Shown: piece after piece, positions 3,086 to 60,063 of the stretch
Layout of the letters: every line of letters begins with the position of its first letter
Position numbering within the stretch: the stretch's first letter is position 1
Origin: Octopus sinensis
Lineage: Eukaryota
Length of the DNA: 64,000 bases
Direction: 5' to 3'
NCBI RefSeq assembly: GCF_006345805.1
Contig: NC_043022.1
Span: 25,048,001-25,112,000 of the forward strand
Position numbers and translations under genes: made by a program
The notes under the pieces: generated by a model
Databases searched by the model: none
Told to the model about the DNA's origin: nothing
The model's input: the letters and a program-made list of their open reading frames with translations, nothing else

Positions 3086-3393
3086 CTGCAAAGACAAGGG
3101 TAAAATAAAAGTAGATATAAATAGCATGAAAGAAATAAGTATGCAAGACAAACAGACAGACAGACAAACAGGGAGGAAGGGTTAATGAGAGGTTACGAAC
3201 AGGTGTGGCTACGTAGTAAGAAGCTTGCTTCTCAAACACATGGTTCCCAGGTTCAGTCCCACTGCATGGCAGCTTGGGAAAGTGTCTTCTACTATAGCCT
3301 CAGGCTGACCAAAGCCTTGTGAATGGATTTGGTAGATGGAAACTGAAAGAAGCCCATCATATATATATATACACATATATGTCTTGCAAACAA

Positions 3394-4847: not shown

Positions 4848-5159
4848 TTGTGGAGGCACATGGCCTAGTGGTTAGAGCAGCTGACTCGCGGTCGAGGGAT
4901 CGCAGGTTCGAATCTCAGACTGGGTGATGTGTGTGTTTATGAGCGAAACACCTAAGCTCCACGCGGTTCCAGCAGAAGGTAATGGCGAACATCTGCTGAC
5001 TCTTTCTCTACAAATTTTTCTCACTCTTTCCTCCTGCATCTTTGCAGCTCACCTGCGACGAACCGGCGTCCCGTTCAGGTGGGGAACCTATACGCCAAGA
5101 AACCGGGAAACCGGCCCTTATGAGCCAGGCATGGCTCGAGAAGGAACAAACAAACAACA
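4848..5159 (+). mobile_element. tRNA-derived SINE (family B) with 14-bp TSD
   Basis: A box TGGCCTAGTGG, B box GGTTCGAATC, (CAA)n tail; TSD ATGACCCAGCTGTG at 4834-4847 and 5160-5173. Confidence 0.85.
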
Positions 5160-5458
5160 ATGACCCAGCTGTGGCATGGCTATTTTAGGGTTTAGTCAAG
5201 CTAACCCTAAAACCAATTTTTTTAAGCCTGATATTCTTTTTTGGTCATCTTCCAATATTGGTCTACAGAGTGTCAGTGTGAGGAGACAATATCAATCACC
5301 CTCTTTTTTTCTGCCACAATGAAGTCCCATTTTTTCTTTAGCATTCCCTTTTGACGAACTGATAATTAACACCAAATAAGCACCAGCTGTCAAGCAATTA
5401 GACACACACACACAAATATATTTGTGTATTTATGTACAAATTTTGTACAAATACTCAC

Positions 5459-5601: not shown

Positions 5602-7450
5602 CTACGAAAACAAAAGAAAACAAAATGTAAATAAAAAGAAATGGTAAAACAGTTTTTAAAAAAATCACTCAATACTCATCATCATCATTGTTTAACATCT
5701 GCCTTCCATGCTAGCATGGGTTGGATGATTTTGACTGAATACTGGCGAACCAGACGGCTGCACCAGGCTCCAATCTTGATTTGGCAGAGTTTCTACAGCT
5801 GGATGCCCTTCCTAATGCCAACCACTCCGAGATTGTAGTGGCTGCTTTTTATGTGCCACCAGCACCGGGCCAGTCAGGCGGTACTGGCAATGACCTCGCT
5901 CGAATCTTTTACACATGCCACCGGCACAGGTGCCAGTAAGGCGGTGTTGGTAATGATCATGCTCGAATGGTGCCCTTTTACGTCCCACCGGCAATGAAAA
6001 TTTCCAATTTCAATTGATTGGAACTCAGCAATTTTTTGGTTAAAGTATATACATTTCTGTAAGTACTATGCTTATGTACTTTTTGTGTATATACGTATGT
6101 GTTTATGCATGTATGTATATTTGTATGTGTATGTGATTGTGTGCATATGTGTATATTTTGTATGCATATATATATATACACATACAGTACTTACACAAAT
6201 ATACATATATGCATACACACAAAAAATACATAAATATAAACAATTCTGCTGAAAAGCGAAGTTAAAGAAATAGAAATTTTATAGAGAAATTGCCAAAGAA
6301 ACAGTTCCATGTTTGTGATGCTTTAACCGAAAGATTGCCAGGAACTCTCATGTATCAGTCTTTTCAAAAAGCTATTTTACAACAGTTTGTCCTTCCTCCA
6401 TGCAGTTGTAGATCTGACTGCCTCCTTAAAATTGTTAGCACATATTTCACTTCTTAAGATTATAGGGTACAATTGAAGGGAAAATTAGCTGCTATTTCTA
6501 GCAGGCTAAGTGACTACAAACAAGCTCACCATTGGCTTCTACTCCCTTGTATTGATAATCTATGTATTATAGGGATAAAGTTATATAATTCCTACATTTT
6601 ATACCTCTTTGGTATCTAAAATGTAATTTTCTGTTTCTTTCCGATCAAAGAAAAAGTAATAAACTAGGATAATTCTTTAAGGATTGTTATCTCTCTCGTC
6701 ATGTAACCATAGGGAATAATCCATAAGGATTTCTTGAAGAGGCTCAACTGGAAACATCAACGGATCTCCAAGGAGCATTTAACTCTTTGTCTGTCCTGTC
6801 TATCACATGTGATATGCAGAACATATTTCCCTGGTGTCCATGTATCAGATATGATACACATTCCCAATTTTATTTCAACTAGAACAACTTGGGACTTATG
6901 AAAGTAAAGCTGGATATTTTGTAAGAAGCTTGCTTCTCAACCACAAGGTCCAGAGTTCAGTCCCACTGTGTAGCACCTTGGGTAAGTGTCTTCTACTCTA
7001 GCCTCAGGGCAGTAAAGACAAAAGTATTTTACAATCAGACATACTTTTTGTCAATTCTTTTAGCCACCATTTATGACAAGTATGGATGGAGGGTATCTAT
7101 CCAAAAACTTCATTAACTATTGTAAATATGACTCAAATTACAGGCTTAATAACTTGAAAAGAAATCATTAAAACAAAATACATATCAATATCTAAACTTT
7201 CCCCTGTGATAAAGGCCACCAGCTCTTCTATACAGCCCTTGGTTTGAACAGCCACCTCAGGCACCAGAACCCATGTCTGTCCTCGTTTGTCCACTCTATG
7301 TTTAGCCCCTTGTGGGTAATAAAGAAATAGGAATCATTAAAAAAAGTACTAATTGACCACTGGGGTTGATGTAATCAACACCCACCTCCTGAAATTGCTG
7401 GCCTTGTGCCAAAATTTGAAACCAATGTATTGTATGTATCTGATACTCAC

Positions 7451-8110: not shown

Positions 8111-8944
8111 AATTCGGCCAGAGTTCTTTCATCACACCCCTGTGACCTCATCAGTGGTCCTTTGCTTTCTTCTTTCTTATTTGTGTGTCTCTCCTTACTA
8201 ACCGTCAGCCATTTTGTATTATTGTTTGTGTTGTTGCTGCAGTTAGTGTTGTTCGCGTCTGTGTTGTTATTGTTGTTGTTGTATATTATTATATGTATGA
8301 AATGACACAGAAATACATACAAACTACGATACAATGATGCCACTCACAGCCCCGCAAAATAAATGTGTAGTCGTTTTCAAGTGGAGAACTTTTTCCCCAA
8401 GTCTATTTGCACAGTGAAAGGTCTTATCAGTTTCAAATACACCGAGACATGACAAATATGATTTTACATGAATACACACACACACACAACAAACACACAT
8501 GTGTGGGTGTGAAATATTTTAAAATGTATTAACTGAAGAAGGTCCTTTGTGTAAGGAGATGCATTTCTTATTATATATTATGCTTTTCCTCACAATCTTC
8601 AGACATGAAGAACAGCCATCATGTGCACATAAGAATGCATATTTCTGTGTGTAGATGTGTGTATGAAAGTATGCAAATGCACGTGGTTACTCTTTTACTT
8701 GTTTCAGTCATTTGACTGCGGCCATGCTAGAGCACCGCCTTTAGTCGAGCAAATCGAATTCTAAAAGGTTAAGTTTACAAATTACTTCACATATGGCGGT
8801 GCCCCAGCATGGTCACAGCTCAAGAGCTGAAACTGGAAAACATAAACAATATCAACCACATACAGTGCAATCTACTTATGAAGTGTTTATATATATATGT
8901 ATGTAAAGGAATGAGTGAGTCTGTGCATGTGTAGTGGTACTCAC

Positions 8945-23910: not shown

Positions 23911-24306
23911 GGCGCAGGAGTGGCTGTGTGGTAAGTAGCTTGCTAACCAACCACATGGTTCCGGGTTCAGTCCCACTGCGTGGCATCTTGGGCAAGTGTC
24001 TCTGCTATAGCCCCGGGCCGACCAATGCCTTGTGAGTGGATTTGGTAGATGGAAACTGAAAGAAGCCTGTCGTATATATGTATATATATATGTGTATGTG
24101 TGTGTGTTTGTACCCCTAGCATTGCTTGACAACCGATGCTGGTGTGTTTATGTCCCCGTACCACTTAGCGGTTCGGCAAAAGAGACCGATAGAATAAGTA
24201 CTGGGCTTACAAAGAATAAGTCCCGGGGTCGATTTGCTCGACTAAAGGCGGTGCTCCAGCATGGCCGCAGTCAAATGACTGAAACAAGCAAAAGAGCAAA
24301 AGAGAG
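23911..24306 (+). mobile_element. tRNA-derived SINE (family A), full length
   Basis: GGAGTGGCTGTGTGGTAAG head, GGTTCAGTCC B box, internal TA/TG microsatellite, GAGTAAAA-type tail. Confidence 0.85.
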
Positions 24307-26414: not shown

Positions 26415-27034
26415 GGTGTAGGAGTGGCTGTGTGGTAAGTAGCTAGTTTATGAACCACATGGTTCCAGGTTCAGTCCCACTGCATGGCACCTTGGGCAAG
26501 TGTCTTCTACTATAGTCTCGGGTCGACCAAAGCCTTGTGAGTGGATTTGGTAGACAGAAACTGAAAGCAGTCCGTCGTATATATGTATATATATATATAT
26601 ATATGAGTGGCTGTGTGGTATATATATATATATATATGAGTGGCTGTGTGGTAAGTAGCTTGTTTACCAAACACATGGTTCTGGGTTCAGTCCCACTGCG
26701 TGGCACCTTGGGCGAGTGTCTTCTACTAGAGCCTCGGGTTGACCAAAGCCTTGTGAGTGGATTTGGTTGACAGAAACTGAAAGAAGCCTGTCGTATATAT
26801 GTATATGTATGTGTGTGTGTATATGTTTGTGTGTCTGTGTTTGTCCCCCCCAACATCGCTTGACAACCAATGCTGGTGTGTTTACGTAACCGTAACTTAG
26901 CGGTTCGGCAAAAACGACCAATAGAATAAGTACTAGGTTTACAAAGAATAAGTCCTGGGGTAGATTTGCTCGACTAAAGGCGGTGCTCCAGCATGGCCAC
27001 AGTCAAATGACTGAAACAAGTAAAAGAGTAAAAG
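26415..27034 (+). mobile_element. Family A SINE, a partial copy followed by a full copy, ending about 50 bp from the juxtamembrane exon donor
   Basis: Heads at about 26420, 26605 (stub) and 26638. Confidence 0.85.
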
Positions 27035-33410: not shown

Positions 33411-35741
33411 TATATAATAGTAGTAGTAGCAGTAGTAATAAAATATTGAAAACATATGTCATTTCATGTTTTTATAAAACATACACATGTTTTGGCAAAT
33501 TACTGCCAAGATTACATAATTGCTTGTTGAAACATTATATTATCTTGTTAATTCACCTTTTCAGTGCTTTTGCTAAACACTATATGTTTGCTGTGTTCCA
33601 CTGATACTATTACATGGCTCGTATTCTGCACACTGCCCTATCCCATGGTTTGATGTCTCATGCTGTACAGCACTGGGTATAGGGGTGGATGGAGTGTAGG
33701 ACTTATTACTGAGCCCAAACTTCCATTACGTGTCATGCTTTGCAGCTTACACACACACACACACATACACACACATATATATATATAAATACACAAATAC
33801 ACATACAGGAGTGCACATAAATTTGTGTAACATATATGTTTGTGTGTGTGTCTGTGCATGAGTGAGTATTACTATTTAAACATACACACATAAGCGTTCA
33901 AGTGTGGAAATAATGAAAAAAAAAAACAAATTAAGAAATTAATAAATAAATATAACGAAGCAGCAGACCGACAATTTTCACAGAACATGAAGCATTGGAA
34001 AGGAACATAACAAAAGCTGAATCTAGATTTTCACTCTCCTCTAATTAATTTAACGAACATTTACTCATTATTTTCTCTGTGTATGTGTGTGTGTATTTAT
34101 TTGCCCACATACATATTGTGGGCAAATAGAGTGCAGGAGTGGCTGTGTGGTAAGTAGCTTGCTAACCAACCACATGGCTCCGGGTTCAGTCCCACTGCAT
34201 GGCATCTTGGGCAAGTGTCTTCTGCTATAGCCCCAGGCCGACCAATGCCTTGTGAGTGGATTTGGTAGACGGAAACTGAAAGAAGCCTGTCGTATATATA
34301 TATATATATATATATATAATGTGTGTGTGTATGTTTGTGTGTCTGTGTTTGTCCCCCTAGTAAATGGTACCTGTGCCAGTGGCATGCAAAAAGCACCCGT
34401 TACACTCTTAGAGTAGTTGGCATTAGGAAGGGCATCTAGCCATAGAAACCCTGCCAAATCAGACTGGAACCATGCTTCCCTGTTCCAGTCACTCCATTTA
34501 ACCCATGCCAACATGGAAAACAGACATTAAATGATGATGATGATGATGATTTCTGTTAGCACTGACAGACTAAAACCTTGGGTTTCATTCAAGTAGATTA
34601 AATCAACTGCATTATTCAGATTTGCAAGGGCAAGTATCTATCACACAGAATACTATACAGCCGACAAAATACTAAATCGTATCCAAGGATGGATTGTAAA
34701 ATCTTATTCTATAGATACAGCCATACCTGAACAAACACAGGTGCGAATTCAGAGCAACAGCAGCAGAGAGCAGTGCTAACTGTATATGATAAATAACCTT
34801 TTCTATCATAGACATGATGCATCTACAGTGTGCTAAAGGTTAATACTGAGTGCTTTATAAATATCTACCTGGATTTTTTAATCCCTTTTATTCAATATGC
34901 ACACACACAGACACACACACATATCTTGCAGTCATACTGCTTTTTTTGTTGTATATTTTATTTTGTTGTGTTTGTTTTTGTCATTGTCCTGTACATTCAT
35001 CAGCTGTTCCTAGCAGCTTCTCATCACTGTCACCACTAAGAGTGAACAATATCAATGTTAAAGGTTCGAAATTGTAATGATCTTTTAGGCGTTGACTGAT
35101 GATGAATTAGCTACGACTTATCTGTTTGTTACGTTTTTTGTAAAATTTTCTGTTTGTTGTGTTTTTGTTAAAATTTTGAAATATCTATCTATATAGCTAT
35201 ATGTTTGTCCTATCTCAGTGTGGAACAGGTAGATGTCTGCCTCAGCGTAAGGTCAGGGCTGAAAGATGTCTGCCTCAGCGTAAGCTGAAGGCTGAAAGAT
35301 AACCTATCACTTTGGTCAAGTATTGAACTCAGAAATATCAGTCAGGAAAAATCTAGTCCTAAAGAACTTATCCACTCACCCAACTTACTACTAAACAACC
35401 TTTCTTGCTTTGCATATTAACATTAAACCTCCATTCACATCAAAAGGCAGGGTGAAAGGATATTAGGGTATTGGGCACCAGCAAAAAAAAAAAAAAAAAA
35501 GACAAAAATGTTCTAGTGGGGTGGGATTATGATAAAGCAAAATTAAAGGCACAATTCAAAAAAGCAAAACATATCATGGCATTAAAGGGTACACACTGCT
35601 TCTTGCAGACATTTTACATCTTTTAATAGCAATTTCATCACCAGCATTACCATCAATTATTGTGTGTAAAGGCATGTGTGTGTCTGTCTGTGTGTGTGTG
35701 TGTGTTGGAAATACTAATCATGAGCTAGAGACATTTCTCAT

Positions 35742-41814: not shown

Positions 41815-41865
41815 TGAGTACAGCTGTTTCTGGGATATTAGCGATATCTCTTCATCAGAGATGAT
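41815..41865 (-). ncRNA. Degenerate hammerhead ribozyme (core, stem II and palindromic stem III present; stem I lost)
   Basis: CTGATGA-A-GAGATAT-cgcta-ATATCCC-A-GAAA-CAGCTG-TA. The flanks do not pair. Confidence 0.4.
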
Positions 41866-41968: not shown

Positions 41969-42280
41969 TGGAGGCACATGGCCTAGTGGTTAGAGCAGTG
42001 GACTCGCAGTCGAGGGATCACAGGTTCGAATCTCAGACCAAGCGATGTGTGTGTCTATGAGCGAAACACCTAAGCTCCACGCGACTCCGGCAGAAGGTAA
42101 TGGCAAACTTTTGCTGACTCTTTCGCCACAACTTTCTCTCACTCTTTCCTCCTGCATCTTGCAGCTCACCTGCGACGGACTGGCATACCATCCAGGTGGG
42201 GAACCTATATGCTAAGAAACCAGGAAACCGGCCCTTATGAGCCAGGTGTGGCTCGAGAAGGAACAAACAACAACAACAAC
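41969..42280 (+). mobile_element. tRNA-derived SINE (family B) inserted in a (TA)n tract
   Basis: Same family as 4848 and 50151. Confidence 0.85.
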
Positions 42281-43505
42281 ATATATATATATGTATGTAT
42301 GTATGTATAAATGTAAATATATATATAAAACTATTGACCAGACAATAAGATGTTGTTTTCATGTACTTCTTTTGCATAGCTGTAGCTTTCAAATGGTGTC
42401 AACCCACTGGCTAGATGGGCAAGCCTACGTCATTTAAGGGGCCAAGATCATGACATTCATCTCTGCACAGGATACAAGTCCATCACAAGATTACTCGTTA
42501 TTGCCATCTGGATGGACATAAAAGGAGGTTTTTTGCTAAAGAACACAACTTAGCAACCTCACAATTACCAGTGGTACAAAAAAGGCACTCAGTTCATACT
42601 CTAACGTGGTTGGCATTTGGAAGGGCATCCAAGCCATAGAAGCCATGTCAAAGACAACGACGAAGCACGGCGCAGCTCAGTGGCATGCCAGATCCTGTCA
42701 AACTGGTTCTTTTTTTCAAGCTAGCAGAGTAAAGCTCCGTGGGTGATTTGGCTGCTATTTCTAGCAACAATACCATAAGTTTGAATACATACAACCTACC
42801 ACAGAATTCCATACATGCACTTATTATTACACCAGATGTATGTATGAATGTAGATATGTATGTAAGTATGTACATGTATATTTATATATTTATACACAGA
42901 GATCTGTAAATACACATACACACATGGACACAGTCAGGCAGATAGATGTGTATTGTGTGGTCACATGTCCTTAAAGGGAGATCACTGGCTTAAATCGGAA
43001 GGCAAAAAACCCCTCTGGGATCAAATCTTAGGTCTGGACTAAGAAATACCTATAATATATTTAGCTCCAGCCTGACTACATGCTTACCAATACAAAAGTA
43101 ACATACACAAATATATATATATACATACATACATACATATACATACATATATATATACATACATATATATATATACATACATACATACATATATATATAT
43201 AAAACACACAAACATGTACACTAAAACACATATATACACACACAGTTATATATAAACATGAACATAGGTATGCATAGATATGTTTAAATACACAAACATA
43301 AATATACGCAGACGCATGACAATATATATATAAATATACATACAGAGATACACTTATATACACACAAACATACATATGCACACAAATACATATATATATA
43401 TATAAATATACATACATAGATACACTTATATACACACAAACATATGCACACAAATACATACATATATATAAATATACATACATAGATACACTAATATACA
43501 CACAA

Positions 43506-44795: not shown

Positions 44796-45325
44796 GCAGA
44801 TTTAAGTAACAATCAAAAAGGACAGAGAAGAAGATGAGAGAGATAATCCATCTGTGATCCGAGAAGAAATTCATCGGTGCCAAGTGTCTTGGAAATCTGT
44901 TGTGACACTTGGAACCAAATCAGATCTCGGTTGCTTTACTTCACGAGATATAACAATAAACGGATTGCAGCTTCCAGCATCGGTTCTTTGAAAATTAGGA
45001 AATAAATCCAAGCATCTTTTGAAATTCATTTCCTTAATGAAAGAAAGTTTTACTGGGATTCACAGGATAAAGAAGGGGGTCATACAAAGGTTAGATGCAT
45101 TTGACCAAATTCCTTCTTCTAATTTCTTACAGTGGCAATTTGACGGATAAATTCAATTACACCACCGCCAACAACAACAACAACAGTACAAACAACCATT
45201 GAGGTAATTTCTCTTCTAAGACAACAACAAAGTTAATCTTAGCCAAGTTCATTTCAGCAAAGTCAATTTTAGCAAAGGTGGCATGAATGGCTTGTAGAAA
45301 TTTTAATTTCCAACACTGGCACAGT

Positions 45326-45920
45326 GTGGCAATGTGGAGTGAAGGTGTAGTTGATTAGGCCAACCCCAGTATGAAACCGGTACAGACACAGCATTGATTT
45401 TTCCAGATAAAAATAAGGATTTTTTTTCTATTATAGGCATAAGGGCTGAAATTTTGGGTGAGAGGCTAGTTGATTATATTGACCCCAGAAATTAACTGTT
45501 ACATATTTTATCAACCCTGAAAGGAGTGGCAATGTGGAGTGATGGTGTAGTTGATTAGGCCATCCCCAGTAAGAAACCGGTACAGACACAGCATTGATTT
45601 TTCCAGATAAAAATGATTTTTTTCTATTATAGGCATAAGGGCTGAAATTTTTGGGTGAGAGGCTAGTTGATTACATTGACCCCAGAAATTAACTGTTACA
45701 TATTTTATCAACCCTGAAAGGAGTGGCAATGTGGAGTGAAGGTGTAGTTGATTAGGCCAACCCCAGTGAGAAACCGGTACAGACACAGCATTGATTTTTC
45801 CAGATAAAAATAAGGAGTTTTTTTATATTATAGGCATGAGGGCTGAAATTTTGGGTGAGAGGCTAGTTGATTATATTGACCCCAGAAATTAACTGTTACA
45901 TATTTTATCAACCCTGAAAG
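45326..45920. repeat. Tandem array of three near-identical units of about 198 bp
   Basis: Unit starts GTGGCAATGTGGAG at 45326, 45526 and 45723. Confidence 0.9.
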
Positions 45921-46305: not shown

Positions 46306-46616
46306 GGCCGACCAAAGCCTTGTGAGTGAATTTGGTAGACGGAAACTGAAAAGAAGCCCGTCGTAGATATGTATATATATATGTATGTATGTGTGCGTGT
46401 ATGTTTGTGTGTCTGTGTTTGTCCCCCCAACATCGCTTGACAACCGATGCTGGTGTGTTTATGTCCCCGTCACTTAGCGGTTTGGCAAAAGAGACCAATA
46501 GAATAAGTACTGGGCTTACAAAGAATAAGTCCCGGGGTCGAGTTGCTCGACTAAAGGCGGTGCTCCAGCATGGCCACAGTCAAATGACAGAAACAAGTAA
46601 AAGAGAAAAAGAGAAA
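46306..46616 (+). mobile_element. Family A SINE, 5'-truncated
   Basis: Matches the 3' three quarters of 23911-24306. Confidence 0.85.
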
Positions 46617-47681: not shown

Positions 47682-48085
47682 CTCTTACTCTCTTTACTCT
47701 TTTACTCTTTCAGTCATTTGACTGTGGCCATGCTGGAGCACCGCCTTTAGTCGAGCAAATCGACCCCAGGACTTATTCTTTGTAAGCCCAGTACTTATTC
47801 TATCGGTCTCTTTTGCCGAACCGCTAAGTGACGGGGACGTAAACACACCAGCATCGGTTGTCGAGGAATGCTAGGGGGAAAAACACACACACACAAACAC
47901 ACACACATATATATATATACATATATACGACAGGCTTCTTTCAGTTTCTGTCTACCAAATTCACTCACAAGGCATTGGTCGGCCCGGGGCTATAGCAGAA
48001 AACACTTGCCCGAGATGCCACGCAGTGGGACTGAACCCGGAACCATGTGGTTGGTTAGCAAGCTACTTACCACACAGCCACTCCT
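47682..48085 (-). mobile_element. Family A SINE, full length, inverted relative to 46306
   Basis: The reverse complement matches family A. Confidence 0.85.
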
Positions 48086-48146
48086 ATATATATATATATA
48101 AAGTAAATAAATGGAGTTGAATGCAGGTGTTATTCAAATTCTTTTA

Positions 48147-48236
48147 CTTTCGACATATGTTTCGAAGACAACATTGGTTTTATTCCAAAGGAAGGAATAA
48201 ATGGTGTAAAATAATGTAATCTTCTCATCAGGAAAG
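48147..48236 (-). ncRNA. Type I hammerhead ribozyme with full consensus core and GUC cleavage site (between 48152 and 48151)
   Basis: Minus strand: CTTTC-CTGATGA-GAAGA...TCTTC-GAAA-CATATG-TC-GAAAG. Stem I 5 bp, stem II 5 bp plus extension, stem III is the palindrome ACATATGT. Confidence 0.8.
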
Positions 48237-48619
48237 AAAGAGAACCTGTCTCAACAACAAGACATTATAACAATTTATTTATTTACTTATACTATACAAA
48301 TTAATGCACATTAACCCGAGTTTCTACCTTTGACTAGGCCATTACATCCTTGTTACTTGCGTGAATATGTATATAGGTAACTTATGCAATGGTAGTTTCA
48401 TGTAGCTACAGTGTGTCTCATGAAGTTATGTAATAGTTGCATAATGTATTTATTCATGCTACTTATTTCCATGTGTCATGCATATCCTCCATATCCTCCA
48501 TGAAAACAGGTGGCCTGAATGAATGTATAACGCAGATATTTACAGGATTTCACGAAACAGACTGCAACCCGAGACCACAACACACTGATTCATATGTAAA
48601 TTACTTCATTATTTATAAA

Positions 48620-49005
48620 TGTGTGTGTATGTATATATACATATATATATATGTGTGCGTGTGTGTGTACATGTGTGTAAATATACATATGTGTGTATGT
48701 GTCTGTGTAAATATACATATGTATGTATGTATATATATATATATGTATGTATATATGTGTGTGTGTAAATATATGAGTGTATGTGTGCATATATATTTGT
48801 GTATATATATGCATATATATATACATATGTGTATATGCATATATGTGTGTGTATATATATACATGTATGTATATGCATATATGTGTGTATATATATATGT
48901 ATGTATATGCATATATGTGTGTATATATGTATATGCATATATATGTATATGTATATGCATATATATGTATATGTATATGCATATATGTGTGTATATGTAT
49001 ATGCA

Positions 49006-49050
<45 letters not shown>

Positions 49051-49145
49051 GCATATATGTGTGTATATATATATATATATGTGTATATATACATATATGT
49101 GTATATATACATATATGTGTATATATATATATATATGTGTATATA

Positions 49146-49189
<44 letters not shown>

Positions 49190-49190
49190 A
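48620..49190. repeat. Compound (TA)n/(TG)n microsatellite block; comparable blocks at about 330-430, 680-870, 10730-11000, 11600-11840, 16550-16740, 28940-29210, 29800-30310, 36530-36810, 43100-43610, 54340-55160 and 62680-63460
   Basis: Dinucleotide-derived low-complexity sequence. Confidence 0.95.
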
Positions 49191-49352
49191 GGTACTGTAA
49201 ATTTAAAGTGAATACTTGATAAGTGTGTATATATATATATATATAGTAGGTACTGTAAATTTAAAGTGAATACTTGATAAGTGTGTATATATATATATAT
49301 ATATATATGTATAGTAGGTACTGTAAATTTAAAGTGAATACTTGATAAGTGT
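49189..49352. repeat. Three copies of GTAGTAGGTACTGTAAATTTAAAGTGAATACTTGATAAGTG separated by variable (TA)n
   Basis: Directly visible triplication. Confidence 0.85.
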
Positions 49353-49712
49353 ATATATATGCATATATGTGTATGTGTATGTATATATATATATATATAC
49401 ACACACACACTGAAGTTTTGGAGAGGACGAAAACATAATACATAACAGTAATACAAGGTACAAATACAAGAGGGTTAAAAAACAAACAGGCAAACAAGCA
49501 AATATAAAATATAAAGAGAAGCGGAAATAAAAAGTGAAAGGTGAGTGTGAGTGTGTGTGTGTGGCGAAGGTAAAAAAAAAGGTACAACAAAGTACACAAA
49601 TTGCATGAATAAGGAAACAAGCAAATAATTACAGGTAGGGTTCAGGTAAAAATATGCTGAACAAATAAGACAGATAAAAGGTGGAGGAAAATAAGAGGGT
49701 CATGCTACTTAC

Positions 49713-50150: not shown

Positions 50151-50466
50151 TGGAGGCACATGACCTGGTGGTTAGAGCAGCGGACTCATGATCGAGGTAT
50201 CGCAGGTTCGAATCTCAGACCGGGTGATGTGTGTGTTTATGAGCGAAAAAACCTAAGCTCCACACGGCTCCGGCAGAAGGTAATGGCGAAACTTCTGCTG
50301 ACTCTTTCGCTGCAACTTTCTCTCATTCTTTCCTCCTGCATCTTGCAGCTCACCTGTGACGGATCGGCGTCCCGTCCAGGTGGGGAACCTATACGCCAAG
50401 GAAACTGGGAAACCGGTCCTAATGAACCAGGTGTGGCTCGAGAAGGAACAAACAAACAAACAACAA
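50151..50466 (+). mobile_element. tRNA-derived SINE (family B) with 14-bp TSD
   Basis: Same family as 4848; TSD ACATTATGTTCTTG at 50137-50150 and 50467-50480. Confidence 0.85.
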
Positions 50467-51840
50467 ACATTATGTTCTTGAGCAAAACACTTCATTTCCT
50501 GTTGTTGCAGTTCAATCAGCAGGTAAAAATGAGTAATCCTGTGAGGGACTGGTGTCCCCTCCAGGTGGGCATTATATACGCCATGGAAACCAGGAAACCG
50601 ATCCTATCAGTCTACACTAGGTGGGAAGGAACTTTACTTTCATTTTTTATGTGTGTGTATTTGTGTATCTACTTACTACATGTTTGCATGCAGCAGGTGT
50701 ATCACGTAGCAGAGCAGAATCAAAACGGTATCAAATTAAGATACCAAAGTGTGTTTGCATCTCTTCAGGGTGGAGAGAAAATGGAAGGAAGATCCACCCT
50801 TCCATTACTGGGTGCATATTTTTGTGAACTACACCTACCAGCATTATGAAGTAACTCTGAACCCCCAGAAACAGCTGTCGGACTTCTCCTCTTTGATTTT
50901 CTGTATCTTTGTACTTTGTGTAAGTTTGCTCTTTTAATATATAAATATTTATATATCTATACTTTTCAATCTTTCCTTTCTCTCTCTCGATTTACACATA
51001 TTAAACCTAAGCAGTTTTCTCTGTTTATTTGCATCATTGTCTCTATATCTGCTCACCTAGATTTCTTTTATAGGCATTCTTTACTCTGCCGAATTGGTCC
51101 TTGGTAAAGATTTTGGAGTATATGTTCAAATCATCTGAGCATTACTGAGTGGTTTCTATAGTATATTGAGCATCTCTGGATCTCATCCCTTGACCCTACA
51201 CACACATATATATATATATCTATGTATGTGTGACTTTGAGTCTTTTGTTTGTCCCCCACCACTGCTTGACAACATGTGTTAGTTTGTTTACATCCCCGTA
51301 ACTTAGCAGTCGTAAATGACCGACAGAATAAATGCCAGACTTAAATAAACAGTGGGGTTGAGTCATTCAACTTCAAGGCGGTGCCCCAGCATGGCCAAAA
51401 TCTAATGACTGAAACAGGTAAAAGATGAAAATATAAAAGATATATGCCATCGTTTAGGCAGCCCAAATAACACCTGTATATCGAACTAGTGTTTCATAGA
51501 GAACTCTTCCTCAGGTAAGTAAATTGGCTTGCATCCTATGATGAGAGTAAATTTTTTAGTTACTTTTTGTTTTGTTTTGTTTTTTATGTTTTTGTGAAGA
51601 GGGTGGGGTAAAATTTAAGTGATGCAGTCAGATATTTCAATCCAAGCAGCTGAAACTACATGTTATATGTAAGTGCTTTTAATCTTCTTTTCTTTTTTTT
51701 AAATCAAAACAATGTAAATTATAAGAAATATTACAAGACAATGATTTCTAATTTTGCCTTTGTTTTTTTCAGCATTTTAGAATCAAGATCCCCTCTTTAG
51801 TAAATCTTCGGAGATGTCAGCTCAAAACATCATATCTTAG

Positions 51841-53561: not shown

Positions 53562-53907
53562 CCATCTTTTACTTGTTTTAGTCACTAGATGGTAGCCATG
53601 CTGGGGCACCGCTTTGAAGAGTTTTAATCAAGTGAATTGACCGCAGTACTTTTCTTAAGCCTTGTACTTATTCTAAGGTACAGGGATGTAAACACACCAA
53701 CACCTCTTATCAAGTGGTGATGGGAGACACACAAAGACACACATACACACACACATTCAAATATATATAAATGACAGGCTTCTTTCAGTTTCCATCTACC
53801 AAATCCATTTATATATATAGTTAATCCAAACATGAAAACACAACAACGCGAGGACATGGAATAAATATAGTATTATTGGACACTCAGGGAGGAAGGGAAG
53901 AAGGAGG

Positions 53908-53942
53908 GTTTTACATTTCGAGCGGAGCTCTTCATCAGAAAC
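53908..53942 (-). ncRNA. Minimal type I hammerhead ribozyme within a Penelope-like repeat (about 53815-54015)
   Basis: GTTT-CTGATGA-A-GAGC-tcc-GCTC-GAAA-TG-TA-AAAC. Extra A after A9; cleavage triplet GUA. Confidence 0.7.
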
Positions 53943-59667: not shown

Positions 59668-60063
59668 GGCACAGGAGTGGCTGTGTGGTAAGTAGCTTGT
59701 TTACCAACCACATGGTTCCGGGTTCAGTCCCATTACGTGGTACCTTGGGCAAGTGTCTTCCACTATAGCCTCAGGCCGACAAAAGCCTTGTGAGTGGATT
59801 TGGTAGACGGAAACTGAAAGAAGCCCGTCGTATATATGTATATATATATGCGTGTGTGTGTTTGTGTGTCTGTGTTTGTCCCCCTAGCATTGCTTGATAA
59901 CCGATGCTGGTGTGTTTACGTCCCCGTTACTTAGCAGTTCGGCAAAAGCGACCGATAGAATAAGTACTGGGCTTACAAAAGAATAAGTCCCGGGGTCGAG
60001 TTGCTCAATTAAAGGCGGTGCTCCAGCATGGCCGCAGTCAAATGACTGAAAAGAGTAAAAGAG
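59668..60063 (+). mobile_element. Family A SINE, full length (partial copies also at about 3203-3380, 6921-7010, 21690-21880, 34133-34358, 51236-51425, 53560-53810)
   Basis: Matches 23911-24306. Confidence 0.85.

What the first reader, a model, noticed from the sequence alone, without database searches (positions are those of the whole stretch)
48147..48236. Full-consensus GUC hammerhead ribozyme in sense with the Eph pre-mRNA, 1.5 kb downstream of a candidate micro-exon
Every core nucleotide is canonical (CUGAUGA, GAAA, GUC). Stem I is 5 perfect pairs, stem II is 5 perfect pairs extended by ACAUU/AAUGU and an internal UAUUCC/GGAAUA hairpin, and stem III is the 8-nt palindrome ACAUAUGU. It would cut the intron between 48152 and 48151. 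Intronic hammerheads have been retained in some vertebrate genes. A co-transcriptional cut here could influence micro-exon choice or transcript output (inference). It may instead be a recent passive Penelope-like insertion that needs a dimer partner.
Basis: partly seen in the sequence, partly recalled or inferred. Interest (0 to 1): 0.7.

Follow-up and report, generated by a model that had tools for sequence, protein, structure and literature searches.

The report
Solo hammerhead ribozyme motif in Eph intron
A complete type I hammerhead ribozyme motif sits on the sense strand inside an Eph receptor gene, but it looks like a single leftover copy from a ribozyme-carrying retroelement, which is common in animal genomes, and nothing shows it regulates the gene.

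Summary
The motif is real and sits at the stated coordinates (minus strand, 48236-48147). It has the CUGAUGA and GAAA core boxes, a GUC cleavage triplet, a G10.1-C11.1 pair, and 5-bp Watson-Crick helices I and II. The predicted cut lies between 48152 and 48151. It is the only such motif in the window. A loose descriptor hits about 1 in 1,000 control windows. With Watson-Crick-only stems and G10.1-C11.1 the rate falls to about 2 per million, so chance is unlikely. Rfam Hammerhead_1 aligns over its full length but scores only 18.1 bits (gathering 34), because helix II carries a 57-nt insert. Helix III is 2 bp plus an AUAU tetraloop. There is no second copy, tandem partner, or RT/GIY-YIG ORF in the window. 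The motif lies about 50 nt from the 3' end of a 508-bp, 33% GC, strongly self-paired block bounded by TA-rich microsatellites. Eph exons lie downstream on the same strand, and an exon-like 42-nt segment lies 1,477 nt upstream. Best reading: a solo type I hammerhead left by a Penelope-like element or retrozyme, weakly active at most. A regulatory role is unsupported. I could not test copy number or orthologous conservation, because no cephalopod genome was reachable.

The parts
48237..48248 (-). Outer extension of helix I, 5' strand. It pairs with 48146-48135, with two 1x1 mismatches.
   Evidence: MFE and centroid folds of 48252-48130.
48232..48236 (-). Helix I 5' strand, CUUUC.
   Evidence: Sequence, descriptor scan, Rfam alignment.
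48225..48231 (-). Catalytic core box C3-U4-G5-A6-U7-G8-A9 (CUGAUGA).
48220..48224 (-). Helix II 5' strand GAAGA, with G10.1 at 48224.
48169..48219 (-). Distal helix II insert: a U-G pair, a 1x1 mismatch, ACAUU/AAUGU, an internal loop, and an 8-bp hairpin (UUUAUUCC/GGAAUAAA) with loop UUCCUUU.
   Evidence: Fold. Rfam alignment shows a 57-nt insert where the model expects 10.
48164..48168 (-). Helix II 3' strand UCUUC, with C11.1 at 48164.
48161..48163 (-). Core G12-A13-A14.
48153..48160 (-). Helix III, A15.1 to U16.1: the palindrome ACAUAUGU. It forms 2 bp plus an AUAU loop in one molecule, or 8 bp between two copies.
   Evidence: Dimer cofold: -41.0 kcal/mol versus 2 x -17.1 kcal/mol.
48151..48152 (-). 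Predicted scissile bond: C17 (48152) then G1.1 (48151).
   Evidence: Follows from hammerhead numbering applied.
48147..48151 (-). Helix I 3' strand, GAAAG.
48135..48146 (-). Outer extension of helix I, 3' strand.
48102..48609 (-). 508-bp non-repetitive block that carries the hammerhead about 50 nt from its 3' end. It is bounded by (TA)8 at 48086-48101 and a TA/TG microsatellite at 48610-49184. This is the putative retroelement remnant.
   Evidence: GC 0.333. Fold z = -2.5, with 0 of 100 shuffles folding as well. No other copy in the window.

Best explanation
This is a genuine type I hammerhead ribozyme motif that survives as a single ('solo') copy. It was most likely left by a hammerhead-carrying retroelement: either the 3' end or pseudo-LTR of a 5'-truncated Penelope-like element, or one monomer of a non-LTR retrozyme. 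The element inserted into a TA-rich microsatellite inside a large intron of an Eph receptor gene, in the sense orientation.

When the intron is transcribed, the RNA can fold into a three-way junction:
- helix I is 5 bp, extendable to about 15 bp;
- helix II is 6 bp, continued by a long imperfect hairpin;
- helix III is 2 bp plus an AUAU tetraloop.

Transesterification 3' of C17 (48152) would leave a 2',3'-cyclic phosphate and a 5'-OH at 48151.

I infer that cleavage is slow or negligible in vivo, for three reasons. Helix III is minimal. No canonical loop1-loop2 contact is recognisable. No second copy is nearby to form the 8-bp intermolecular helix III. I therefore read the motif as a neutral passenger of the intron, not a regulator of Eph splicing.

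Shown here: the motif, its fold, its uniqueness in the window, its improbability by chance, and its gene context. Inferred: the retroelement origin, the low activity, and the lack of function.
For: Motif and chance:
- The core and all three helices are verified.
- Rfam Hammerhead_1 aligns over model positions 1-45 of 45 and is the top family for the region.
- Control rates fall from 7.8e-4 per window (loose descriptor) to 2.4e-6 with Watson-Crick-only stems and G10.1-C11.1.
- G10.1-C11.1 and a palindromic helix III are the features listed as arguing against random origin of animal hammerheads (PMC4209133).

Retroelement origin:
- Most PLE-type hammerheads occur as single motifs attributed to truncated elements (PMC4209133).
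- PLE hammerheads lie near the elements' 3' ends, and N-terminal-EN PLEs (Naiad, Chlamys) show an insertion bias for microsatellites, with Neptune hypothesised to share it (PMC8557442).
- Here the motif is about 50 nt from the 3' end of a 508-bp block flanked by TA-rich microsatellites.
- The block has 33% GC and is strongly self-paired, z = -2.5. Low GC and strong self-pairing are described for animal retrozymes (PMC7229834).
- Penelope-like elements are a recognised TE order in octopus genomes (PMC13282606 and PMC8967140).
- About 43% of Xenopus retrozymes overlap introns, so intronic copies are common (bioRxiv 10.64898/2026.07.22.740005).

Low activity:
- The dimer gain is only -6.8 kcal/mol, and no partner copy exists in the window.
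Against: - No RT or GIY-YIG domain appears on the same strand anywhere from 27.3 to 64 kb.
- There is no second copy, tandem repeat or pseudo-LTR partner in the window.
- The motif does not reach the Rfam gathering score (18.1 versus 34 bits) and is missed entirely with standard filters.
- A 57-nt helix II insert is atypical of described animal type I hammerheads.
- The unpaired nucleotide between A9 and G10.1 that is typical of PLE min-HHRs is absent.
- Multi-copy family membership could not be tested. Two metagenome pattern scans found nothing. Three window ORFs are not on record in the assembly index.
- TA microsatellites are everywhere in this window, and a SINE-like repeat sits beside the (TA)8, so the flank argument is weak.
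- Mussel retrozyme hammerheads that lack canonical loop contacts still cleave as monomers at about 0.1 per min (PMC7229834), so 'inactive' is not secure.
Confidence: 0.6

Rival explanations
1. Chance look-alike. An AT-rich imperfect hairpin in a microsatellite-rich intron happens to carry CUGAUGA and GAAA...UC in its internal loop. It has no ribozyme ancestry or activity.
For: - The loose descriptor hits about 1e-3 of 64-kb control windows. That implies tens of chance hits in a genome of a few gigabases.
- The Rfam score is sub-threshold (18.1 bits). Its E-value of 0.042 applies to only 136 nt, and I calculate that it scales to hundreds of equal-scoring sites genome-wide.
- ACATATGT occurs 10 times in the window, several-fold above my estimate from base composition, because of TA/CA repeats.
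- No homologous copy was found.
- The long helix II is unusual for natural hammerheads.
Against: - With Watson-Crick-only 5-bp stems and G10.1-C11.1, the control rate falls to 2.4e-6 per window, and to 0 of 415,800 with the palindromic helix III.
- Helix I extends to about 15 bp and helix II to about 19 bp.
- These extra features match those published as hallmarks of real animal hammerheads (PMC4209133).
- Caveat: some of these features were chosen after I had seen the motif.
Confidence: 0.1
2. Exapted regulatory ribozyme. The hammerhead is kept by selection in the Eph intron and cleaves the nascent pre-mRNA 1.5 kb after an alternative 42-nt exon. This would modulate exon choice or transcript output, by analogy with the conserved amniote intronic hammerheads HH9 and HH10.
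For: - It is in the sense orientation inside the transcription unit.
- The core is intact and the helices have no wobble pairs.
- Long closing helices could stabilise the junction.
- An exon-like segment at 49754-49713 has strong splice signals, and its phase is compatible with the juxtamembrane exon.
- About 21 kb of intron remains to be transcribed, which gives even a slow ribozyme time to act (inference).
- Invertebrate retrozyme hammerheads, whose helix III is described as 2 bp plus a tetraloop, can cleave as monomers (PMC7229834).
Against: - There are no conservation data.
- Neither the HH9 nor the HH10 Rfam model matches.
- Helix III is minimal, unlike the stable helix III I recall for HH9 and HH10 (from memory).
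- No recognisable tertiary loop contacts are present.
- Retrozyme-type hammerheads are statistically depleted from introns, consistent with selection against such insertions and not for them.
- Slow intronic ribozymes are tolerated without effect on splicing because exons stay tethered to Pol II (my recollection of the literature, not checked here).
Confidence: 0.07
3. A retroelement-derived hammerhead that is still catalytically competent as a monomer. It cuts a fraction of Eph pre-mRNAs, with no selected function: a mildly deleterious or neutral cost.
For: - The anatomy is the same as in the best explanation.
- The mussel retrozyme hammerhead, which lacks canonical loop nucleotides, cleaves co-transcriptionally at about 0.1 per min, and the coral one at about 0.8 per min (PMC7229834).
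- The extended helix I has two 1x1 mismatches and helix II has a 1x1 mismatch, all 6-9 bp from the core, roughly where I recall tertiary contacts forming (the link to contacts is inference).
Against: - A 2-bp helix III with an A/U-rich tetraloop is weak.
- The MFE fold does not form helix III and partly mispairs the core.
- The PLE min-HHRs tested showed only low activity even as dimers (PMC4209133).
- The long helix II may mis-position any loop contact.
Confidence: 0.18

Closest known systems
Animal type I hammerhead ribozymes (Rfam RF00163 Hammerhead_1; newt satellite 2, Schistosoma Sm-alpha, retrozyme hammerheads)
   Same: Identical core and type I topology (helix I open). G10.1-C11.1 pair, GUC cleavage site, and a short palindromic helix III. 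The Rfam consensus itself draws helix III as ACGCGCGU. The alignment covers the full model.
   Different: Helix II carries a 57-nt insert where the model expects about 10 nt. The score is 18.1 bits against a gathering score of 34. No canonical loop1/loop2 nucleotides are recognisable. It is a single copy, not a tandem array.
Penelope-like element pseudo-LTR hammerheads (min-HHRs; Cervera and de la Pena 2014, PMC4209133)
   Same: Short helix I (4-5 bp). It occurs as a solo motif, as most PLE hammerheads do. Helix III is palindromic. It lies near the 3' end of a short block flanked by microsatellite. PLEs are present in octopus genomes.
   Different: No unpaired nucleotide between A9 and G10.1. 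No RT/GIY-YIG ORF or second pseudo-LTR in the window. Helix III is present, not absent.
Non-LTR retrozymes of invertebrates (mussel, coral; PMC7229834)
   Same: Type I hammerhead inside a low-GC (33%), highly self-paired unit of a few hundred nucleotides. Helix III is 2 bp plus a tetraloop, as described for invertebrate hammerheads. The mussel, a mollusc, has about 5,000 copies.
   Different: It is not in a tandem repeat. The 508-bp block is longer than the reported 170-400 nt units. No circular RNA evidence is available.
Amniote intronic hammerheads HH9 and HH10 (Rfam RF02275 and RF02277)
   Same: A type I hammerhead on the sense strand of an intron of a protein-coding gene.
   Different: Neither Rfam model matches. 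From my recollection of the literature, those motifs have a stable helix III and are ultraconserved at orthologous positions. Here helix III is minimal and conservation is untested.

Membership tests
Hammerhead ribozyme, type I | Conserved core: C3 U4 G5 A6 N7 G8 A9, G12 A13 A14, A15.1-U16.1, and H17 (not G) | tested here: met
   CUGAUGA 48231-48225, GAA 48163-48161, A15.1 48160, U16.1 48153, C17 48152.
Hammerhead ribozyme, type I | Three helices around the core, with helix I open-ended | tested here: met
   Helix I is 5 bp (extendable to about 15 bp), helix II is 6 bp plus a distal hairpin, and helix III is 2 bp plus a tetraloop. The MFE fold recovers helices I and II.
Hammerhead ribozyme, type I | G10.1-C11.1 closing pair of helix II | tested here: met
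   G at 48224 pairs with C at 48164.
Hammerhead ribozyme, type I | Rfam RF00163 gathering score (34 bits) | tested here: not met
   18.1 bits, E = 0.042 in a 136-nt search. No hit at gathering over the whole window, nor at E <= 10 in 1.2 kb.
Hammerhead ribozyme, type I | Loop1-loop2 tertiary contacts that allow activity at physiological Mg2+ | tested here: inconclusive
   There are no canonical loops. Only 1x1 mismatches lie 6-9 bp from the core in helices I and II.
Hammerhead ribozyme, type I | Site-specific self-cleavage that yields a 2',3'-cyclic phosphate and a 5'-OH | not testable with these tools
   This needs in vitro transcription and end mapping.
Penelope-like element hammerhead (pseudo-LTR) | Lies in a repeat that flanks an RT plus GIY-YIG ORF | tested here: not met
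   No Pfam domain in minus-strand ORF fragments of 35 aa or more from 27.3 to 64 kb. Most published PLE hammerheads are solo, however (PMC4209133).
Penelope-like element hammerhead (pseudo-LTR) | min-HHR architecture: an unpaired nucleotide between A9 and G10.1, helix II of 7-8 bp, and little or no helix III | tested here: not met
   There is no extra nucleotide after A9, and a palindromic helix III is present.
Penelope-like element hammerhead (pseudo-LTR) | Belongs to a multi-copy consensus family with covarying stems in the same genome | not testable with these tools
   No cephalopod genome was reachable. Metagenome scans were empty and assembly look-ups were empty.
Non-LTR retrozyme | Head-to-tail tandem repeats of about 170-400 bp, each with a type I hammerhead | tested here: not met
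   There is a single copy. No similar sequence occurs elsewhere in the window, and no tandem repeat covers the motif.
Non-LTR retrozyme | Low GC and a highly self-paired unit | tested here: met
   GC 0.333. The 508-nt fold gives -122.2 kcal/mol, z = -2.5, with 0 of 100 shuffles as good.
Amniote-type conserved intronic hammerhead (HH9/HH10) | Match to the RF02275 or RF02277 model | tested here: not met
   Only Hammerhead_1 is listed for the region at E <= 10.
Amniote-type conserved intronic hammerhead (HH9/HH10) | Conserved at the orthologous intron position across species | not testable with these tools
   No orthologous loci could be fetched.

The most novel reading that the evidence does not exclude
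The hammerhead is a domesticated, catalytically active intronic ribozyme of a cephalopod Eph receptor gene, conserved among octopods. It cleaves the nascent transcript just downstream of an alternative 42-nt exon and so tunes isoform choice or receptor dosage. This would be an invertebrate counterpart of the amniote HH9/HH10 intronic ribozymes, with an unusually long helix II.
Probability: 0.06. Interest if true: 0.7.

Novelty: new member of a known kind. Interest (0 to 1): 0.25.

Why it matters
If it is only a retroelement fossil, it adds one more example to the thousands of solo type I hammerheads in animal genomes. It also shows that hammerheads with long helix II inserts escape standard Rfam screening. 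That matters only for ribozyme censuses in cephalopods, for which my literature search found no paper describing hammerheads. It would matter more if the motif proved conserved and active. A self-cleaving RNA inside a neural guidance-receptor gene, next to an alternative micro-exon, would give a testable invertebrate case of ribozyme-mediated control of pre-mRNA processing.

Tried and rejected
- Rfam at gathering threshold over the whole window, and at E <= 10 over 1.2 kb, gave no hammerhead. Only a 136-nt search with lax filters showed Hammerhead_1.
- Other core look-alikes at 8121-8154, 41816-41858 and 53904-53938 fail the helix rules.
- Self-BLAST of 48086-48440 against the window found only TA-repeat matches, so there is no partner copy.
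- All six reading frames of 48100-48640 show no coding potential.
- Pfam on all minus-strand ORF fragments from 27.3 to 64 kb found nothing: no RT, no GIY-YIG, and no further Eph exons.
- Exact-product look-ups of three window ORFs, meant to reach other assemblies of the locus, found nothing on record.
- The protein search with Eph exons returned only short Eph fragments (357 aa or less) at no more than 64% identity over the full query. The few higher-identity hits covered half the query or less. No cephalopod locus came back, so orthologous introns could not be fetched.
- Two metagenome pattern scans, one with both halves and a variable helix II and one with the 3' half alone, returned 0 hits.
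- ARAGORN found no tRNA in the adjacent SINE-like repeat.
- I ran no further search on the 32-44 aa ORF across the motif. Window ORFs are evidently not in that collection.

Full report
**1. Observation**

On the minus strand, the window reads 5'-CUUUC CUGAUGA GAAGA ... UCUUC GAA ACAUAUGU C GAAAG-3' from 48236 to 48147. In standard hammerhead numbering:
- C3-A9 is 48231-48225.
- G10.1 is 48224 and C11.1 is 48164.
- G12-A14 is 48163-48161.
- A15.1 is 48160, U16.1 is 48153 and C17 is 48152.
- G1.1 is 48151.

Helix I (CUUUC/GAAAG) and the base of helix II (GAAGA/UCUUC) are each five Watson-Crick pairs. A U-G pair, ACAUU/AAUGU and an 8-bp terminal hairpin extend helix II. The minimum-free-energy fold of the 98-nt segment recovers helices I and II (-17.1 kcal/mol, z = -2.35).

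With more flank, helix I extends to about 15 pairs with two 1x1 mismatches (48248-48237 with 48146-48135; -24.8 kcal/mol, z = -2.0). The plus strand folds less well (z = -1.3).

The 8-nt palindrome ACAUAUGU cannot form four intramolecular pairs without a loop. In one molecule helix III is A-U and C-G capped by AUAU. The 8-bp helix forms only between two copies. Cofolding gives -41.0 kcal/mol against 2 x -17.1 kcal/mol, a gain of 6.8 kcal/mol. That is too little for two separate pre-mRNAs to pair at cellular concentrations (my estimate).

**2. Is it more than chance?**

My structural descriptor uses CUGANGA, GAA(A), helices I and II of at least 5 bp including G-U, helix III of at least 2 bp, H17 not G, and helix II up to 90 nt. 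It finds only this site in the 64 kb on both strands. Controls:
- 1 hit in 400 dinucleotide-preserving shuffles.
- 2 hits among 1,889 decoy cores (permutations of the core boxes) on the real sequence.
- 7.8e-4 hits per window over 415,800 shuffle-by-decoy window equivalents.

A loose look-alike is thus rare in one window but expected tens of times in a genome of a few gigabases. Requiring the observed quality lowers the rate sharply:
- Watson-Crick-only stems: 2.6e-5.
- Adding G10.1-C11.1: 2.4e-6.
- Adding the 8-nt palindrome: 0 of 415,800.

ACATATGT occurs 10 times in the window. That is several-fold above my estimate from base composition, because of TA/CA repeats, so the last step is somewhat optimistic. 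Some of these features were chosen after I had seen the motif. However, G10.1-C11.1 and a palindromic helix III are exactly the features published as arguing against random origin of animal hammerheads (PMC4209133). I put the chance explanation at about 10%.

**3. Database recognition**

Rfam finds nothing at gathering threshold over the window, and nothing at E <= 10 over 1.2 kb. When only 136 nt are searched, so that the filters are lax, RF00163 Hammerhead_1 is the top family. It covers 48146-48237 on the minus strand, model positions 1-45 of 45, with 18.1 bits (gathering 34) and E = 0.042. Every core position matches, and a 57-nt insertion sits where the model expects 10 nt in helix II. The Rfam consensus itself writes helix III as a loop-less 8-nt palindrome (ACGCGCGU), which is the same architecture. 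The HH9 and HH10 models do not match. Topologically this is a type I hammerhead, but it fails the curated score because of the long helix II.

**4. Surroundings**

Eph gene context:
- Eph receptor exons lie on the minus strand: the juxtamembrane exon from 27231, kinase exons at about 24673-24482, 12972-12898, 11598-11392, 9061-8945, 7645-7388 and 5601-5413, and the SAM exon at 3078-2818.
- The best protein hits carry the PK_Tyr and EphA2_TM Pfam domains.
- The hammerhead lies 20.9 kb upstream of the juxtamembrane exon on the same strand.
- No further Eph exon, and no other Pfam domain, is detectable in minus-strand ORF fragments between 27.3 and 64 kb. The extracellular-domain exons must therefore lie beyond the window. 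That the motif is intronic is a strong inference, not a demonstration.
A long polypyrimidine tract and AG precede it, and GTAAGT follows it. It lies 1,477 nt upstream of the motif.
- This segment's open frame ends with one nucleotide (A). Joined to the juxtamembrane exon, that gives ...GG-M-T-V-P-L-F..., which resembles the EMTTPLF of an unnamed metagenomic (JGI) Eph homologue. Its actual use is unverified.

Local block:
- The motif sits about 50 nt from the 3' end of a 508-bp non-repetitive block (48102-48609).
- The block is bounded by (TA)8 (48086-48101) and a 575-bp TA/TG microsatellite (48610-49184).
- A 156-bp SINE-like repeat abuts the (TA)8, and nine more copies of it occur in the window.
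- The block has 33% GC and no coding potential.
- It folds into two long self-paired domains (-122.2 kcal/mol, z = -2.5, 0 of 100 shuffles as good).
- Nothing similar to the block occurs elsewhere in the window, and no tandem repeat covers it.

**5. Interpretation**

The literature describes type I hammerheads as abundant in animal genomes:
- Type I hammerheads are abundant in many animal genomes, with about 5,000 copies in the mussel and about 126,000 motifs in the axolotl (PMC7229834).
- They reside in the pseudo-LTRs and 3' regions of Penelope-like elements and in short non-LTR retrozyme repeats (PMC4209133, PMC7229834, PMC8557442).
- Most occur as single motifs attributed to truncated elements (PMC4209133).
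- PLE hammerheads lie near the elements' 3' ends. An insertion bias for microsatellites is reported for Naiad and Chlamys PLEs and hypothesised for Neptune (PMC8557442).
- About 43% of Xenopus retrozymes overlap introns, although they are statistically depleted there (bioRxiv 10.64898/2026.07.22.740005).
- Penelope-like elements are a recognised TE order in octopus genomes (PMC13282606 and PMC8967140).

The anatomy here fits a solo retroelement-derived hammerhead. It is a solo type I motif near the 3' end of a short, AT-rich, self-paired block embedded in TA microsatellite.

The motif is closer to the 'canonical' animal type I form than to PLE min-HHRs. Helix III is present, and no nucleotide separates A9 and G10.1. 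A retrozyme monomer is therefore as likely a source as a PLE tail.

Activity cannot be computed. The weak helix III, the lack of recognisable loop-loop contacts and the absence of a partner all argue for slow cleavage. Against that, mussel and coral retrozyme hammerheads do cleave as single copies, at about 0.1 and 0.8 per min (PMC7229834), so some cleavage of the nascent intron is not excluded. Nothing indicates a selected role in Eph splicing.

**6. What could not be done**

No cephalopod genome, Dfam or Repbase was reachable. Metagenome scans, assembly look-ups and the protein search gave no related locus. Copy number, family covariation and orthologous conservation are the decisive tests, and they remain open.

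**7. Verdict**

The hammerhead identity is supported, although below the Rfam threshold. The regulatory interpretation is unsupported. The most likely reading is a passive, solo, retroelement-derived type I hammerhead with an unusually long helix II: a new member of a known kind, of modest interest.

Noticed in passing
window 49754-49713 (minus strand): An exon-like 42-nt segment with a long polypyrimidine tract plus AG (49756-49755) and a GTAAGT donor (49712-49707). Its open frame ends in phase 1. Joined to the juxtamembrane exon (from 27231), it reads ...GG-MTVPLF..., which resembles the EMTTPLF of an unnamed metagenomic (JGI) Eph homologue.
   Followed up: partly
window 47930-48085; also 3201-3354, 6921-7003, 23916-24070, 26420-26570, 26638-26791, 34135-34290, 46306-46361, 53774-53807, 59673-59828: A 156-bp SINE-like interspersed repeat with ten full or partial copies in the window at 81-96% identity. 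One copy abuts the (TA)8 next to the hammerhead tail. ARAGORN calls no tRNA in that copy.
   Followed up: partly
window 48603-48766: Sub-threshold Rfam hits to mir-297, mir-466, mir-3149 and mir-1277. I read them as artefacts of the (TA/TG)n microsatellite, not microRNA genes.
   Followed up: yes
window about 45300-45830 (minus strand): Several consecutive, near-identical ORF pieces (for example ...SGKINAVSVPVSYWGWPNQLHLHSTLPLLSGLIKYVTVNFWGQ...). They suggest a tandem repeat with a unit of roughly 130-260 bp. Its nature is unknown.
   Followed up: no
window 49160-49370: A 58/68-bp tandem repeat of about 3.2 copies at the edge of the large TA microsatellite.
   Followed up: no
window about 4875-5185, 42033-42392, 50240-50603: Three copies of another interspersed repeat that share the translated motif GELQDAGGK(S/N)ERKL.RKSQQKF. 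It is not classified.
   Followed up: no
window 8121-8154, 41816-41858, 53904-53938 (minus strand): Three sites match CTGATGA...GAAA...TC (3 observed against 0.61 expected by shuffling) but lack proper helices I to III. The site at 41816 has a palindromic CAGCUG after GAAA, but an A-A where G10.1-C11.1 should be.
   Followed up: yes
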